Below are positions 154-20,889 of a stretch of 64,000 bases of DNA, in pieces. A program made the translations under genes and the position numbers. The stretch lies in the sequence record MW021758.1. One strand, written 5' to 3'. The notes beneath the pieces are model-generated. The model did not search any database, was not told the DNA's origin, and saw only the letters and a list, made by a program, of their open reading frames with translations. The first letter of the stretch is position 1. Every line of letters starts with the position of its first letter.

Positions 154-1086
154 TCATTCACAGGCCTCTTTCACCAGTTCTTCGTAACTCTTAATACCCG
201 CACAACGACCACCTGCTGCATCAGGGTGGCCACCACCAGAGAACTTCTTAGCTACATGGGACGCTAACCCGGAACCGGCACGAGAACGGAAACTGAATCC
301 CATACCCTTACCGCTAATACTTGTACCGATCACCAGATCTACACGCGGGTTCTTCTCCATGATCTGAGAAGCAACCTCAGAGATGAAGATATGCGGGCAG
401 TTCAGAACGGCGATGGTGGTATCGACTTGACCTTTAGGGCCGCGAATAACCTGACCGCGATACCACCAAGTAGCATTCTTCATGAACCACTCTACTTGCT
501 GATCGCGTGCTTTGACCAGGATATCAGCCATCGCAGTAATTTCATCTACACCAGCTTGGTCTTGGGTGTAAAGGACTTTAACGAACGGCGGGAAGATAAC
601 ATCCGGTTCACCCTTAGCCAGGAAGGTAGCGAAGTACTCATGATACTTACGCATGTCCGGGGTAAGTAACCAAAGGTCACGCAGTTCTACCAATTTAACC
701 ATAGGCGGCATTGGTTCGTTTGGATAGAGGTATTCCCATGCCAGGCCTGCACCTGAGTGAGCCATATCGAAACCGATGTGGTCACCTGGACGCATGTGCT
801 CTTTCGCATGACCGGCACGGTCAGTAGAGTCTTTGTGATGATCGAGTAGAATGCAACGCTGGGTCTTTTCCCAGTTAGCGCTTGTCCACTCAGTGTCAGG
901 GCAGAAGTCTACGAAGAAGACTACCTTACCTTCGACGTCCAGAGTATTAGGACGACCGTAGTTAATTGGTTGATACGTGGCCAATGGATAACGAGTATAC
1001 ATCAGCGCAGCGGCTGCGAAGCCGTCCATGCAGCTATCGTGATAGAAGACTACAACGTTTTTATCATTAACAGGATAATCGTACAT
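154..1086 (-). CDS. DHH/DHHA1-family phosphoesterase
   Basis: Motifs YHDSCMDG, FVDF, LDHH, RDLW and C-terminal GGGHPDAAG. Confidence 0.88.
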   Translation of the reverse strand: MYDYPVNDKNVVVFYHDSCMDGFAAAALMYTRYPLATYQPINYGRPNTLDVEGKVVFFVDFCPDTEWTSANWEKTQRCILLDHHKDSTDRAGHAKEHMRPGDHIGFDMAHSGAGLAWEYLYPNEPMPPMVKLVELRDLWLLTPDMRKYHEYFATFLAKGEPDVIFPPFVKVLYTQDQAGVDEITAMADILVKARDQQVEWFMKNATWWYRGQVIRGPKGQVDTTIAVLNCPHIFISEVASQIMEKNPRVDLVIGTSISGKGMGFSFRSRAGSGLASHVAKKFSGGGHPDAAGGRCAGIKSYEELVKEACE

Positions 1087-1471: not shown

Positions 1472-3828
<2,357 letters not shown>

Positions 3829-4785: not shown

Positions 4786-5079
4786 TTAACGGTGTATTGA
4801 CAACGTACCTTCCTTCAAGTCAGTTGGACGGTACTTCTGCAGCGCGTTGATAACTGAACGCAGTGGTTGCGGCGACATCTGAACCAGATGCATCAGATCA
4901 CGTACCGGTAAAGTCAGTGCCCGGCCACGGATAGATGCAGCGCAGTTCTTAATCGCGACGTTGTTAGTCGGGTTGTTGTAGTTGCACAACTGAAGGGAGA
5001 TCAGGGCATCCGACATTTCTTCCTTTTCTACTTGGTTCATGTTCATCATCGCTTCCTCTATTTGTTTAAGTTCAGACAT
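4786..5079 (-). CDS. Hypothetical helical protein
   Basis: 97-aa ORF. Confidence 0.75.
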   Translation of the reverse strand: MSELKQIEEAMMNMNQVEKEEMSDALISLQLCNYNNPTNNVAIKNCAASIRGRALTLPVRDLMHLVQMSPQPLRSVINALQKYRPTDLKEGTLSIHR

Positions 5080-5501: not shown

Positions 5502-5590
5502 GTGTAAATCTCTCTAAACTAAATTGTAAAATAGTAGAGAGTAGGAAAATCCTACTCTCGATTTAATCGACTGATTCGATTATCATTAAA

Positions 5591-5607
5591 GTAATATAGA
5601 CCTGAAA
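5591..5607 (-). promoter_or_regulatory. phiKZ-type early promoter
   Basis: Minus strand TTTCAGGTCTATATTAC. Confidence 0.75.
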
Positions 5608-5613
5608 TTATCT

Positions 5614-5883
5614 TCAGATCTTGCAGCCTTCGCAGTCGCCGTCATCGACGAACTCTTCACCGCTTTCAGCCCGCTCTTCGTTACGAGCAGCTACCGCATC
5701 GAAATCGATACCGTCGAACAAAGAGTCCAGGGAATCACCGCTTTGATCGATAACCTTTGCGCCGTCGCCAGTTACCGGGAGCTCGTCGAAGGTCGTTGTT
5801 AATTTAGTTTCGCCACGAGTTTGGCCTGGCAGAGCGGTAGAATCGGCGGCTGGTTTGAAATAGGAAGAAAGATCTTTAGTCAC
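5614..5883 (-). CDS. Acidic small protein ending in RNR-alpha-like CxxC-KI tail
   Basis: GTG start with SD AAGGA; C-terminus EEFVDDGDCEGCKI. Confidence 0.75.
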   Translation of the reverse strand: MTKDLSSYFKPAADSTALPGQTRGETKLTTTFDELPVTGDGAKVIDQSGDSLDSLFDGIDFDAVAARNEERAESGEEFVDDGDCEGCKI

Positions 5884-5894
5884 GTTTATTTTCC

Positions 5895-6053
5895 TTAGTG
5901 CTGAGGGTTTGCCATAATGGTTGCCAGGCCGTCCAGGCTACCGTAATGGAAGTCGCATTGAGAGACTGACACAGGTTGCTCGTTTGAACCAGATTCGAAA
6001 TAAGCGTTCTCTGGTTTTACTTCTGCTACATTAGCAGGTGCTGACTGTTGCAT
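5895..6053 (-). CDS. 52-aa hypothetical protein (MQQSAPANVAEVKPENAYFES...)
   Basis: Manual translation; ATG preceded by AAGGA; below ORF-track cutoff. Confidence 0.65.
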   Translation of the reverse strand: MQQSAPANVAEVKPENAYFESGSNEQPVSVSQCDFHYGSLDGLATIMANPQH

Positions 6054-6224
6054 GGTTTATTCCTTAAAGGAGGGGTGATAGTCTAGTTGTTACTAAACTA
6101 TTTAAAGAGTATTTGAAAAAATAAGGGAACAAAAAAAAGAGGGACGACCCTCTTAAGAATCCCTCCCAAAAGGGAGGGGTTATTTGTACTGCTTACTTCC
6201 CGGAATCATAGAATCAAGGGGAAA

Positions 6225-6848: not shown

Positions 6849-7324
6849 AGACCCTTTTCCTTAATCTTGGCTACGATGTCGTCGACACCCATGACGAAGT
6901 AACTGTTAGTGAATGTCGGCAAAGTTTTGTGGAACCAATCCAACGCTGCTTCTGGACTGGTTGTTAAGTGGATCGCAGAGTTCATTGTATCTTCAGTAAG
7001 GTAATCGGCAGAACGGCAATGACGGAAACCTTTACCGATTACCAGACGGTTACAGATAACTTTGTTGTTACTCCCTACCGCATACTCGTAAACCCTACCC
7101 TCGGGAGTAATGAGCATCCCTAGCATTTCACCGGAACGATCAACGGGAACCTTGTTGTCTTCGATGATATCAAGGATAGCGAAACAGCTTAGAGAGTAGG
7201 GGACAATGAATCCGTGTGGCGTGAATAGAGAATCCCAGCTAAGAGTAGTCGGTAGCCCTGAACTCTTTTGGATCTTCGTACTAAAGATGACTTTATCATC
7301 GTAGAAAGCTGCGAAGTTTTTCAT
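6845..7324 (-). CDS. Degenerate Ntn-hydrolase/HslV-like paralog
   Basis: Similar length and layout to the adjacent Ntn-like gene; catalytic N-terminus absent. Confidence 0.35.
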   Translation of the reverse strand: MKNFAAFYDDKVIFSTKIQKSSGLPTTLSWDSLFTPHGFIVPYSLSCFAILDIIEDNKVPVDRSGEMLGMLITPEGRVYEYAVGSNNKVICNRLVIGKGFRHCRSADYLTEDTMNSAIHLTTSPEAALDWFHKTLPTFTNSYFVMGVDDIVAKIKEKGL

Positions 7325-7848
7325 TTAGATTTCTTCCTTTTGATAAGCTCCAGATCTTTAGCACGGTGAATGACTACCGTGCCACCGCAATCAGGATTCA
7401 TCAATATGGCGTTCCGCACCGATGACTCTACATCGAATCCGTTAGATAACGATTGCAGAGCAGTACGCATCCCGTTACCTGCTGCCCATGGGATACCTTT
7501 CTCCCAGCGTATGATACCAGTCACCCCGACGTAGTAATGGTGTCTACGTGTCATGAAGCAAAGCGTACGAGTAGAGTCTTCCATACCGTATCGTTCCAGG
7601 ATGTCTTTAGATAATGGAAGCGTATCTAAATCCCCCTCCTCCATTTCAATGACTTTCTCACTGAAATAAAAGAACTCTTTACACGCCCAGTCAATAGTCG
7701 TGTTATCGCCAACCATCCCCATAACGACTTTCCCGCCGAATGAGAATAACTTGAGCATACCGCACAAACGCTCTGTGTATTTCCCCTGATCAATAATCCC
7801 TCTTGAGTCAGCAGCAATAACACCCTTGTGATAAAGAATAATGGACAA
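7321..7848 (-). CDS. HslV/proteasome-beta-like Ntn peptidase
   Basis: SIILYHKGVIAADSR, KL, G-x-G and ...MNPDCGG motifs; TTG start at 7848 behind AAGGAG exposes an N-terminal Ser. Confidence 0.65.
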   Translation of the reverse strand: MSIILYHKGVIAADSRGIIDQGKYTERLCGMLKLFSFGGKVVMGMVGDNTTIDWACKEFFYFSEKVIEMEEGDLDTLPLSKDILERYGMEDSTRTLCFMTRRHHYYVGVTGIIRWEKGIPWAAGNGMRTALQSLSNGFDVESSVRNAILMNPDCGGTVVIHRAKDLELIKRKKSK

Positions 7849-7916
7849 AGCGATCTCCTTATTTGTCAATGAAACAAAAAATAAAGAGAGGGCATTTAGC
7901 CCTCTCCTATGCTCCG

Positions 7917-19617: not shown

Positions 19618-20889
19618 ATGAAACACACCCGGAATATCATCCAACAGAAACGCGAAGAATTCTCCTGCCCAGCGTTTGAATCAATCGACATCCCTGATTA
19701 TGTCGATGACGCCGAACTGGCAGTTGAATTGGAAGAAGGCCGCAACGGTATCGCTGACCGCCTGGATGAGTCAGAGAATCTGACCGACCGCGCCGATCGC
19801 ATGACCGACATGTGCGAGTTCATCGAAAGCGAAATCAACCCAAACCAAAATACCCCGATCAACGAAGTTGCGCTGATCGAACAAGCGACCGCCGCTAACC
19901 TGGACGGCACCGGTATCGAAGTGGAAGAAGTCATGCCTTCGATGGAAGCGTATGTAGACTCCACCGTTTCCCTGGAAGGCTTCCAGGACAAAATCAAAGC
20001 CCTGGTCGGCGCCGTTGGTGATCTGGTAGAATCTGCGAAAGATGCCTTCACCGACTTTATGAAATCAACCTTCACTCGCCTGGGCGCTCTGAAGAAACGT
20101 ATTCAGGAAGTAGAAAGTAAAGTAGGTTCCGGCGAATTCAAAGAAGAAGTCGACGTTCCTAAAGCTCTGGCTAAACGCGCCCTGACCGTAGGTAATGATC
20201 AGATCGATAACGCCGCTGCCCTGAACTCTGCTGTGGAAACCTTCATCCGGGATGTCCAGGGTAAAGGTGTAGGTCTGTCCAAACTGACCGCTGGTGAATA
20301 CGACAAATTCCTGGAAGTAGTAGTCCAGGCTGCTCGTAACTCTGGTCGCGGTAAAGACAATGACCGTCTGCGCGATGACCTGCGTGGCAAACTGGTTAAG
20401 TTGTTCAACGACTTCCAGAAACAAGCCAAAGGCCTGTACGGTGAAAACTCCAAAGAGCTGGGTTCTTTCTACGTGGGTTCTAACTTCGGTACTCAGGTAA
20501 CTGAAGCTAACCAGATCCCTAACGCAGCTAAGAAGACTCTGGTTGATATCGGACCGGCCAGTAACGACCACTCTTCCGCCGTTAAGTTCAAGGGCATGGA
20601 TAAGTCCAGTGCAACTGGCATCATCCGTAAACTGAAAACTGCATCAGGTACCCTGGCAACCTTCTCCAAAACCAACGCCATGGCAAACATCGACTGGGCA
20701 TCTGCTGAACTGTCTGGTGTTATCACCTGGATCCTGGAAGGCGAAGACACTCGTTCCATGTGGGCTCTGGTTAACTCCATGTCTCGCATGTACACTCGTT
20801 GCTACACCGGCCCGGTAGCTGCGTACACCAGTCACTTCTTCAAAGTGGCTAACGCAGAACTTGACCTGATCGAGAAGTGCATCGACTAA
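19618..20889 (+). CDS. Virion internal head protein (phiKZ-like paralog family) with acidic propeptide
   Basis: Acidic N-terminal about 120 aa ending in SME and SLE motifs; highly biased codon usage. Confidence 0.7.
   Translation: MKHTRNIIQQKREEFSCPAFESIDIPDYVDDAELAVELEEGRNGIADRLDESENLTDRADRMTDMCEFIESEINPNQNTPINEVALIEQATAANLDGTGIEVEEVMPSMEAYVDSTVSLEGFQDKIKALVGAVGDLVESAKDAFTDFMKSTFTRLGALKKRIQEVESKVGSGEFKEEVDVPKALAKRALTVGNDQIDNAAALNSAVETFIRDVQGKGVGLSKLTAGEYDKFLEVVVQAARNSGRGKDNDRLRDDLRGKLVKLFNDFQKQAKGLYGENSKELGSFYVGSNFGTQVTEANQIPNAAKKTLVDIGPASNDHSSAVKFKGMDKSSATGIIRKLKTASGTLATFSKTNAMANIDWASAELSGVITWILEGEDTRSMWALVNSMSRMYTRCYTGPVAAYTSHFFKVANAELDLIEKCID

What the first reader, a model, noticed from the sequence alone, without database searches (positions are those of the whole stretch)
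5614..5883. Free-standing RNR-alpha redox tail as an independent protein
This 89-aa acidic, probably disordered protein ends in DDGDCEGCKI, closely matching class Ia NrdA C-termini (E. coli ...DDGCESGACKI), whose Cys pair carries electrons from thioredoxin/glutaredoxin to the active site. No nrdA body lies upstream in any frame. Hypotheses: the trans-acting tail of a split phage RNR, a booster or inhibitor of host RNR, or a thioredoxin decoy. The internal LDSLFDGIDFD also loosely recalls the acidic-aromatic beta-subunit tails that dock on alpha.
Basis: partly seen in the sequence, partly recalled or inferred. Interest (0 to 1): 0.7.

Follow-up and report, generated by a model that had tools for sequence, protein, structure and literature searches.

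The report
Free-standing ribonucleotide reductase tail protein
A jumbo Serratia phage with no ribonucleotide reductase of its own makes a small acidic, floppy protein whose last seven residues match the electron-carrying tail of the enzyme that makes DNA building blocks; the host bacteria have a 43-residue version, so this may be an unrecognised way of tuning DNA-precursor supply.

Summary
Window 5614-5883 (-) is gp204 of Serratia jumbo phage Yaphecito (Moabitevirus): 89 aa, pI 4.05, mostly disordered, ending DDGDCEGCKI.

The last seven residues, DC[ED]GCKI-COOH, are invariant in every relative. They also end 13 class Ia RNR alpha genes of phages, including T4-like Klebsiella/Enterobacter phages. 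E. coli, Erwinia and Pantoea NrdA end ...DDGCESGACKI. That is alike by eye, but the cysteines are spaced C-x4-C, and BLASTP and HMMER do not detect the match.

The split-RNR idea fails. Yaphecito, Erwinia phage Y2 and Salmonella phage KKP 3828 have no NrdA or NrdB body.

Three results are new:
- gp204 belongs to phrog_10239. That family also includes a conserved chromosomal 43-aa gene in Serratia, Erwinia, Pantoea, Rahnella, Hafnia and others.
- The same tail is fused to Acb4 anti-CBASS sponge domains and to other small phage proteins.
- In four diverged jumbo-phage contigs the gene lies beside or within 450 nt of a glutaredoxin gene. In other lineages it lies among or near deaminase and thymidylate synthase genes.

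Best reading (0.4): a free alpha tail that glutaredoxin or thioredoxin reduces and that acts on host RNR. Whether it boosts or inhibits RNR, or serves counter-defence, is unresolved. I found no literature on it.

The parts
5614..5883 (-). gp204 coding sequence: 89 aa with a GTG start, stop codon TGA at 5614-5616. A member of phrog_10239.
5617..5637 (-). Residues 83-89, DCEGCKI-COOH. Invariant tail, identical to the C-terminus of phage class Ia RNR alpha.
5617..5727 (-). Residues 53-89, the conserved core module: an acidic/aromatic D-x-L-F-D-x-I-D-F-D stretch, a short helix, an acidic run and the tail. This is the part shared with the 38-46 aa phage proteins and the 43-aa host proteins.
5665..5703 (-). 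Residues 61-73, the only sizeable predicted helix (pLDDT about 70).
5848..5883 (-). Residues 1-12, the N-terminal motif M-x-KDLS-x-Y-[FL]-[KQ]-P. It is shared only with the closest relatives, P0001, P0002 (phage Totoro), P0003 and P0005. Role unknown.
5892..5896 (-). AAGGA ribosome-binding site for gp204, overlapping the stop codon of gp205.
5895..6053 (-). gp205, 52 aa of unknown function, the first gene of the two-gene unit. Homologues found only in near-identical genomes.
6054..6136 (-). AT-rich leader and probable promoter region of the gp205-gp204 unit, directly after two terminator-like hairpins at 6137-6181. No sigma-70-like site was found.
5537..5621 (-). Two terminator-like hairpins after gp204, at 5598-5621 and 5537-5559. 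Together with the upstream hairpins they bracket the small unit.
4786..5079 (-). gp202, a DUF7740 (PF24886) protein two genes downstream. A DUF7740 gene lies directly upstream of the tail gene in the Y2-like phages (Y2, SSEM1, Berlingot), L080 and L015.

Best explanation
gp204 is a free-standing copy of the C-terminal redox tail of class Ia ribonucleotide reductase alpha. The tail is carried on a short, acidic, mostly disordered scaffold made of an acidic/aromatic stretch and one amphipathic helix. The protein is not a piece of a phage RNR, because this phage has none. It belongs to a family (phrog_10239) found in many phages of Enterobacterales and, as a 43-aa chromosomal gene, in their hosts, including Serratia marcescens.

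Shown: the gene, its conservation, the identity of its tail with RNR-alpha tails, the absence of an RNR body, the host homologue, and the glutaredoxin and deoxynucleotide-gene neighbourhoods.

Inferred: the Cys-x-x-Cys pair cycles between dithiol and disulfide. It is reduced by glutaredoxin or thioredoxin, as the enzyme's own tail is. It then reaches the partner of that tail, the active-site disulfide of host NrdA, so that it changes how fast host RNR is recycled.

I favour a supporting role, an extra electron-carrying tail for host dNTP synthesis early in infection, because three phages with no RNR of their own keep the gene. The direction of the effect is not shown.
For: 1. Tail identity. 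DC[ED]GCKI plus stop ends 13 phage NrdA genes in IMG/VR. Pfam finds ATP-cone, all-alpha and barrel domains in the four tested. The preceding acidic run is also shared.
2. Invariance. Both Cys, the Gly and the terminal K-I are invariant across phage and host members.
3. One family. phrog_10239 matches gp204 (E 1.8e-4), the Serratia 43-aa protein (1.3e-7) and other phage members (down to 1e-13). BLASTP of gp204 against host protein P0011 gives E 4e-5.
4. The host gene is a real coding gene. Variation per pair is 20.7 at the third codon position against 5.9 and 6.4 at the first two. It has a -10-like box and a Shine-Dalgarno sequence.
5. No RNR body in Yaphecito, Y2 or KKP 3828, so any target must be a host protein.
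6. Glutaredoxin neighbour. A CPYC glutaredoxin gene (PF00462) abuts the tail gene in three diverged jumbo-phage contigs and lies 450 nt downstream in a fourth. Their glutaredoxins are 51-61% identical to one another. By established knowledge, glutaredoxin is a natural reductant of this tail in E. coli and T4 RNR.
7. Deoxynucleotide neighbourhood. The gene lies between cytidine/CMP deaminase and thymidylate synthase in Yoloswag and pEa_SNUABM_5, and about 2.5 kb upstream of thymidylate synthase in the Y2-like phages.
8. The tail is always at the extreme C-terminus and is predicted flexible, as in NrdA.
Against: - No interaction or redox chemistry was tested. All function is inferred from a 7-11 residue identity plus gene context.
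- Host NrdA in the carrier genera has C-x4-C spacing, not C-x2-C.
- Standard homology tools do not link gp204 to E. coli NrdA.
- The host gene has no fixed neighbours and lies next to no nrd gene.
- NrdR-box pairs are not enriched upstream of it: 2 of 110, at background rate. The strict pattern also missed the E. coli nrdA control, so this test is weak.
- Yaphecito itself has no detectable glutaredoxin.
- The immediate neighbours of gp204 are of unknown function.
- The same tail on Acb4 sponge domains is not explained by an RNR role.
- A tethered native tail should out-compete a free one, unless the scaffold docks on alpha.
Confidence: 0.4

Rival explanations
1. Decoy or inhibitor. The free tail competes with the host enzyme's own tail, either for glutaredoxin/thioredoxin or for the entrance to the NrdA active site. 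It thereby lowers host RNR turnover or diverts reducing power. This would be a bacterial and phage counterpart of the small disordered RNR inhibitors of yeasts.
For: The tail identity and glutaredoxin adjacency are the same as for the best explanation. The protein is small, acidic and disordered, as known small RNR inhibitors are (established knowledge about Sml1-type proteins). The host's own 43-aa version could be a brake on RNR.
Against: Three phages that have no RNR keep the gene, so they depend on host dNTP synthesis or on recycled host DNA. For them an inhibitor is harder to rationalise. No similarity to the beta-subunit tail that would block subunit docking.
Confidence: 0.2
2. Counter-defence module. 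The tail, or the whole small protein, targets a host immune component rather than RNR. The likeness to the RNR tail is mimicry of whatever that component recognises.
For: Nine IMG/VR proteins join a PF13876 domain to the same tail. PF13876 is the Acb4 family of anti-CBASS sponges, whose members are often fused to other counter-defence parts and sometimes carry extensions of unknown role. The gene sits among small genes of unknown function, in a self-contained unit between terminators. A DUF7740 gene lies next to or near it in three lineages.
Against: No match in the models searched links gp204 to a defence or counter-defence family; the PADLOC library was not searched. The host itself carries a conserved homologue under purifying selection, which is odd for an anti-host weapon. 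The glutaredoxin, deaminase and thymidylate synthase contexts point to nucleotide metabolism.
Confidence: 0.15
3. Metal or disulfide clasp. Two C-x-x-C tails from two chains bind one metal ion or form intermolecular disulfides. The tail would then be a portable dimerisation device with no link to RNR.
For: There are only two cysteines per chain, at a flexible end. The tail is attached to unrelated N-terminal parts, including the oligomeric Acb4.
Against: This does not explain identity with RNR tails beyond the cysteines, namely the acidic run, D before Cys, Gly, and terminal K-I. It does not explain the glutaredoxin adjacency.
Confidence: 0.1
4. Trans-acting tail of a split phage RNR.
For: Tail identity with phage NrdA.
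Against: No NrdA or NrdB body in the complete Yaphecito genome, in the first 50 kb of Y2, or in KKP 3828. None is annotated. Class II and III RNR were checked only through annotation.
Confidence: 0.02
5. RiPP-type precursor peptide: a conserved leader plus a Cys-containing core that a maturase modifies.
For: Small size, a conserved N-terminal motif, and an invariant Cys-rich C-terminal core.
Against: No conserved neighbouring enzyme gene in hosts, where the context differs between genera, or in phages. The core is identical to an enzyme's tail.
Confidence: 0.03

Closest known systems
C-terminal redox tail of class Ia ribonucleotide reductase alpha (NrdA)
   Same: The terminal peptide, an acidic run followed by D-C-[ED]-G-C-K-I-COOH, is identical to that of 13 phage NrdA genes. 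It is similar to the enterobacterial ...DDGCESGACKI. Both are flexible and lie at the extreme C-terminus.
   Different: No ATP-cone, all-alpha or barrel domain; it is a protein of its own. Host NrdA has C-x4-C spacing. The phage has no RNR.
phrog_10239 (PHROGs family, function unknown)
   Same: gp204 residues 57-89 match profile positions 13-47 of 47 (E 1.8e-4). Other phage members and the host 43-aa protein match the same profile.
   Different: gp204 has about 50 extra N-terminal residues with their own conserved start motif. The family has no described function.
Chromosomal 43-aa proteins of Serratia, Erwinia, Pantoea, Rahnella, Hafnia, Sodalis and others (all 'hypothetical')
   Same: Same architecture and tail. 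About 50% identity to gp204 over the core.
   Different: Shorter and chromosomal, with varying neighbours. One copy in each representative genome hit by the scan.
Small disordered RNR regulators of yeasts (Sml1-type; from established knowledge, not tested here)
   Same: Small, disordered proteins acting on RNR alpha. Sml1 is reported to compete with the alpha C-terminal domain.
   Different: No sequences were compared. Those proteins do not carry the redox tail itself. No bacterial or phage equivalent is known to me.
Acb4 anti-CBASS sponge family (PF13876)
   Same: Some phage Acb4 homologues end in the same tail.
   Different: gp204 has no PF13876 domain.
Genes-in-pieces phage RNR (nrdA split by a mobile element; from established knowledge)
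   Same: The idea of an RNR part encoded apart from the rest.
   Different: Here no other RNR part exists in the genome.

Membership tests
Class Ia RNR alpha (NrdA) | ATP-cone, all-alpha and ten-stranded barrel domains (PF03477, PF00317, PF02867) | tested here: not met
   Pfam finds no family in gp204 at E<=1. The same search finds all three domains in four phage NrdA sequences.
Class Ia RNR alpha (NrdA) | C-terminal flexible tail with a redox cysteine pair after an acidic run | tested here: met
   DCEGCKI matches phage NrdA L113 7/7, pairwise E 4e-4. Thirteen NrdA genes end this way. The tail is disordered in the model.
Class Ia RNR alpha (NrdA) | Detectable sequence relationship to host-type (E. 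coli) NrdA | tested here: not met
   phmmer and a family profile against PDB sequences give no NrdA at E<=10. BLASTP against the last 59 residues of E. coli NrdA gives none at E<=100. The spacing differs: C-x4-C against C-x2-C.
Split (genes-in-pieces) phage RNR | The remaining RNR parts are encoded elsewhere in the same genome | tested here: not met
   tblastn with five NrdA sequences and E. coli NrdB against all 275,554 bp finds nothing better than E 0.1, apart from the tail itself. No RNR is annotated.
phrog_10239 | Significant match to the family profile, including its C-terminal end | tested here: met
   E 1.8e-4, 23 bits, residues 57-89 on profile positions 13-47 of 47. Relatives score down to 1e-13.
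Thioredoxin/glutaredoxin fold proteins | C-x-x-C at the start of a helix within a thioredoxin fold | tested here: not met
   No Pfam match. The AF2 model has no strands, and the motif lies in a disordered end.
RNR beta-subunit C-terminal tail mimic | Similarity of the acidic/aromatic stretch to NrdB C-termini | tested here: not met
   BLASTP against the last 49 residues of E. coli NrdB gives none at E<=100. Thirteen NrdB termini end in a hydrophobic-x-hydrophobic-x-L type pattern at a free C-terminus, whereas the gp204 stretch is internal. Binding itself cannot be tested here.
Acb4 / PF13876 sponge | PF13876 domain | tested here: not met
   Absent from gp204. Present in other tail-bearing proteins.
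RiPP precursor | A conserved adjacent maturase gene | tested here: not met
   Host neighbours differ between genera: YlaC, Cho and CvrA; YedI-like and DUF6388; NhaB; DcuA and GlpM. Of 46 phage neighbours scanned, no Pfam family matched more than one.
NrdR regulon (host 43-aa gene) | A pair of NrdR boxes upstream | tested here: inconclusive
   With the published pattern (PMC13584703), 2 of 110 upstream regions match, which is background rate. The E. coli nrdA control also fails the strict pattern.
Sml1-type small RNR inhibitors | Sequence or structural similarity; binding to RNR alpha | not tested
   No comparator sequence was obtained through the tools, and binding cannot be tested here.

The most novel reading that the evidence does not exclude
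Enterobacterales and their phages encode free-standing RNR-alpha tails. The 43-aa host protein is an unrecognised small regulator or electron carrier of class Ia RNR. Phages, including ones with no RNR at all, have copied it, and have also grafted its tail onto other early proteins such as Acb4 sponges. They would use it to take control of the glutaredoxin/thioredoxin-to-RNR electron relay, and so of host dNTP supply, during infection.
Probability: 0.3. Interest if true: 0.85.

Novelty: new variant of a known kind. Interest (0 to 1): 0.72.

Why it matters
RNR sets the supply of DNA precursors, and its regulation in bacteria is thought to rest on allostery and the NrdR repressor. No small protein partner that carries the enzyme's own redox tail has been described. 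Full-text searches for the tail sequences and for phage small-protein RNR inhibitors found nothing.

If the family acts on RNR or its reductants, it would matter in three ways:
- It would be a new layer of control in a well-studied enzyme system.
- It would give a function to an unannotated or 'hypothetical' gene present in many plant-associated and clinical Enterobacterales.
- It would explain how phages lacking RNR can still influence host dNTP synthesis.

The fusion of the tail to Acb4 sponges also links nucleotide metabolism and counter-defence genes in a way that can be examined by comparative genomics.

Tried and rejected
- Pfam on gp204 and five neighbours: nothing for gp204.
- phmmer and a 34-sequence host-family profile against PDB sequences: no NrdA, and nothing useful.
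- blastn of the gene and of the Serratia host gene against 5,426 E. coli genomes: no homologue. This is weak for so short a gene.
- NCBIfam and Pfam on the host 43-aa protein: no family.
- A local HMM of the host family against six-frame ORFs of all loci: phage NrdA sequences score 10-17 bits through the tail only, and E. coli NrdA does not score.
- NrdR-box scan upstream of the host gene: no enrichment. One loose pair in the gp205-gp204 leader (from 6098) is at chance level for AT-rich DNA.
- Sigma-70 promoter scan: no site upstream of the unit.
- Pfam scan of 46 neighbours of free-tail genes in 14 diverse loci: mostly unknowns and no recurrent family, but it revealed the glutaredoxin.
- tblastn with the 45-aa L020 protein against phages: no match.
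- Literature: no paper contains the tail strings, and no paper on phage small proteins acting on RNR was found.
- About 57 of the 112 IMG/VR pattern hits are one repeated frame inside a prophage gene annotated as KilA-N, with no acidic context and no PHROG match. I set them aside as a probable out-of-frame chance match.
- Fold search was not run, because the model is too disordered to give meaningful matches.
These were the termini of E. coli NrdA and NrdB, an SSB tail, a clamp-binding motif, an NrdR box, a mycofactocin precursor tail, a methanobactin core, a small E. coli protein (MntS) and a herpesvirus R2 peptide. Every comparator in this report comes from a tool output or a cited paper.

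Full report
**What is there.** The window is 100% identical to Serratia phage vB_SmaM_Yaphecito (MW021758.1, genus Moabitevirus, 275,554 bp); window position 1 is record position 186,001. The phage is phiKZ-like. Its record lists virion and non-virion multisubunit RNA polymerases and a tubulin-like protein, and the window holds a phiKZ-type internal head protein.

The finding's ORF is at 5614-5883 on the minus strand. It has a GTG start and 89 codons and ends ...EEFVDDGDCEGCKI. It is annotated gp204, 'hypothetical protein'. An AAGGA ribosome-binding site precedes it. It follows a 52-aa gene (gp205) by 11 bases. The pair is bracketed by terminator-like hairpins, which the Moabite record also annotates. 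The protein has pI 4.05, with 21 acidic and 8 basic residues. AlphaFold2 with a 24-sequence alignment gives mean pLDDT 59, with helices only at residues 51-55 and 61-73. The description 'acidic, probably disordered, ends in DDGDCEGCKI' is correct.

**Is the tail conserved?** Yes.
- tblastn against 50,697 phage records found full-length copies in the nine near-identical Moabitevirus-type records and a 63-aa version in phage Totoro. It also found matches confined to the C-terminal 35-45 residues in unrelated phages: Erwinia/Pantoea Loessnervirus (Y2, SSEM1, Berlingot and others), Salmonella/Enterobacter Koutsourovirus, and the Erwinia jumbo phages pEa_SNUABM_5 and Yoloswag.
- A later search added Wellington, Kwan, AH04, Y3 and others.
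- An exhaustive phmmer search of 1.8 billion representatives found only eight hits. Among them are proteins of 38, 46, 88 and 98 aa with the same end.
- In an alignment of ten members, D60, D83, C84, G86, C87, K88 and I89 are invariant.

The shared core is about 37 residues: an acidic/aromatic stretch (in gp204 D-S-L-F-D-G-I-D-F-D), a short helix, an acidic run, then D-C-[ED]-G-C-K-I at the carboxyl end.

**Is it the RNR-alpha tail?** I scanned IMG/VR for the back-translated heptapeptide plus stop and got 112 loci. Sorted by the ORF that ends at the motif, they fall into five groups:
- 13 are class Ia RNR alpha genes of 748-781 aa, or cut copies. Pfam finds ATP-cone, all-alpha and barrel domains in the four I tested. 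nrdB follows nrdA directly in at least 12 of the 13. One of them (L113) is 98.8% identical to the annotated class Ia alpha gene of T4-like Citrobacter, Klebsiella, Enterobacter and Cronobacter phages.
- About 29 are free small acidic proteins like gp204.
- 9 join a PF13876 domain to the tail.
- 4 are other small proteins.
- About 57 are one repeated frame inside a prophage gene annotated as KilA-N. It has no acidic context and no PHROG match, and I treat it as a multiplied chance match.

The NrdA tails also share the acidic run before the first cysteine.

I fetched E. coli nrdA through the tools. It ends ...IQDDGCESGACKI. So do 113 enterobacterial NrdA sequences, including those of Erwinia, Pantoea and Leminorella. 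By eye this matches DDGDCEGCKI with two one-residue gaps. However, the cysteine spacing is C-x4-C rather than C-x2-C, and neither BLASTP nor HMMER against PDB sequences reports it.

**Not a split RNR.** tblastn with E. coli NrdA, NrdB and YfaE and four phage NrdA sequences was run against the complete Yaphecito genome, the first 50 kb of Y2 and all of KKP 3828. Nothing scored better than E about 0.1, and the only NrdA-derived matches are the tails themselves. The Yaphecito record lists no RNR, thioredoxin or glutaredoxin. Class II and III enzymes were checked only through that annotation. Whatever the tail does in these phages, it does with host proteins.

**A host homologue.** About 110 of the 120 hits are a chromosomal ORF of about 43 aa, with one hit per genome. 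Its pattern is M-[SN]-D-D-[IM]-F-[DE]-F-D-I-D-A-x-L, then a helix-like stretch, then [EV]-x-P, then an acidic run and D-C-E-G-C-K-I. The genera include Pantoea, Erwinia, Serratia, Rahnella, Ewingella, Rouxiella, Hafnia, Budvicia, Leminorella, Sodalis, Tatumella, Mixta and Izhakiella. These include the hosts of most of the cultured phage carriers. Serratia marcescens itself has the gene.

- Where sources name it, it is 'hypothetical'. It matches no Pfam or NCBIfam model.
- It behaves as a coding gene under purifying selection. Among 103 distinct sequences, mean pairwise differences are 5.9, 6.4 and 20.7 at codon positions 1, 2 and 3.
- It has a -10-like box and a Shine-Dalgarno sequence.
- Its neighbours differ between genera and are never nrd genes.
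- NrdR-box pairs are not enriched upstream, although that test is weak.

An independent profile, phrog_10239, matches gp204 (E 1.8e-4), the Serratia protein (1.3e-7) and other phage members (to 1e-13). BLASTP of gp204 against the host protein gives E 4e-5. MAFFT aligns the whole core at about 50% identity. gp204 is thus the phage member of a family shared with the host. No E. coli counterpart was seen at the DNA level, and Enterobacteriaceae proper were nearly absent from the scan.

**Context clues.**
1. A CPYC glutaredoxin gene (PF00462) lies next to the free-tail gene in four diverged jumbo-phage contigs of 260-271 kb. In L022, L055 and L058 the two genes abut. In L020 the order is reversed, with a 450-nt gap. 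The glutaredoxins are only 51-61% identical, so the pairing has been kept over considerable divergence. In RNR-bearing loci a glutaredoxin-like gene sits near nrdAB.
2. In Yoloswag the tail-bearing gp34 lies between cytidine deaminase and thymidylate synthase. In pEa_SNUABM_5 the 208-aa member lies between CMP deaminase and thymidylate synthase. In the Y2-like phages it lies about 2.5 kb upstream of thymidylate synthase.
3. A DUF7740 gene lies directly upstream of the tail gene in the Y2-like phages, L080 and L015, and two genes downstream in the window (gp202). Its function is unknown.
4. PF13876, which carries the tail in nine phage proteins, is the Acb4 family of anti-CBASS sponges. Its authors note that some homologues have extensions of unknown role, and a second paper notes frequent fusions among counter-defence parts.

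**How it most likely works.** Established knowledge is that the class Ia alpha tail swings between the active-site disulfide and thioredoxin or glutaredoxin.

Shown here:
- The same peptide exists as a separate, conserved, flexible protein in phages without RNR and in their hosts.
- It sometimes lies beside a glutaredoxin gene or among deoxynucleotide genes.

Inferred:
- The free tail is reduced by glutaredoxin or thioredoxin and engages host NrdA.
- The acidic/aromatic stretch and the helix supply the docking that a free peptide would need in order to compete with the tethered native tail.

I favour a supporting role, because RNR-less phages retain the gene. An inhibitory or decoy role, a counter-defence role (suggested by the Acb4 fusions) and a metal or disulfide clasp all remain possible. 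The resemblance of the internal stretch to beta-subunit tails is not supported.

**Novelty.** The family exists in PHROGs without a function. Full-text searches for the tail strings and for phage small proteins acting on RNR found nothing. A free-standing RNR-alpha tail, shared by hosts and phages and grafted onto other phage proteins, is a new variant of a known device. If it does act on RNR, it would be a new kind of regulator in bacteria.

**Limits.**
- Function rests on a 7-11 residue identity plus gene context.
- The genome scan was truncated at 120 rows.
- IMG/VR loci are partial, so presence or absence of RNR in most carriers is unknown.
- No complex prediction was possible with the tools at hand.
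- I also declare that some short motifs were recalled from memory in my reasoning. None was used as evidence (see Tried and rejected).

Noticed in passing
L159:3805-3933 (+) in Serratia ureilytica; also L123, L151, L157, L167 and about 105 other genome loci: A conserved, mostly unannotated chromosomal gene of about 43 aa. It has the same architecture and tail as gp204 and occurs in many Erwiniaceae, Yersiniaceae, Hafniaceae, Budviciaceae and Sodalis-type bacteria. Its neighbours vary and it has its own -10-like box.
   Followed up: yes
L053:1913-2266 (-), L043:1753-2106 (+), L116:8801-9175 (-), and L035, L077, L091, L101, L102, L107: Phage proteins of 114-125 aa that join a PF13876 (Acb4 anti-CBASS sponge) domain to the same DC[ED]GCKI tail.
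   Followed up: partly
L022:6997-7388, L055:2246-2644, L058:2249-2647, L020:557-1416: A CPYC glutaredoxin gene beside the free-tail gene, or 450 nt from it, in four diverged jumbo-phage contigs.
   Followed up: partly
L003:3983-4105 (+) = Erwinia phage Y2 HQ728264.1 16137-16259: The 40-aa family member of phage Y2 is not annotated in the record. It lies between gp39 (DUF7740) and gp40 and overlaps the start of gp40.
   Followed up: partly
window 4786-5079 (-), gp202; L003:3747-3992; L015:5442-5663: A DUF7740 (PF24886) gene recurs next to or near the tail gene in three phage lineages. Its function is unknown, and the Y2 copy is cysteine-rich.
   Followed up: partly
L014:8791-9189 (+) and about 56 near-identical IMG/VR prophage loci: The tail pattern also ends a 133-codon frame inside a prophage gene annotated as a KilA-N domain protein in E. 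coli. The frame has no acidic context and no PHROG match, so it is probably an out-of-frame chance match. Which frame is translated was not settled.
   Followed up: partly
L040:4975-5229 (-), L048:7746-7952 (+), L089, L052:7131-7343 (+): Three further small phage proteins (69-85 aa) with unrelated N-terminal parts and no Pfam or PHROG match end in DDC[ED]GCKI.
   Followed up: no
window 5848-5883 (-): The first 12 residues of gp204 (M-x-KDLS-x-Y-F-K-P) are conserved in Totoro, P0003 and P0005 even where the middle of the protein is deleted. This suggests a second functional motif.
   Followed up: no
window 7321-7869 (-); 1472-3547 (-); 154-1086 (-); 19618-20889 (+): Neighbouring genes are an HslV-like peptidase (Moabite and RefSeq annotation; no Pfam hit here), a DNA ligase (record annotation), a DHH/DHHA1 phosphoesterase and a phiKZ-type internal head protein.
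   Followed up: partly
window 6098-6140: A loose match to the published NrdR-box pair pattern lies in the AT-rich leader of the gp205-gp204 unit. Five such pairs occur in the window, so it is at chance level.
   Followed up: partly
L004:3851-4135 (+), Salmonella phage KKP 3828: The 94-aa Koutsourovirus member has an extra Cys-rich N-terminal part and lies two genes upstream of the T7-type RNA polymerase gene. Every gene in that record is annotated 'hypothetical'.
   Followed up: partly
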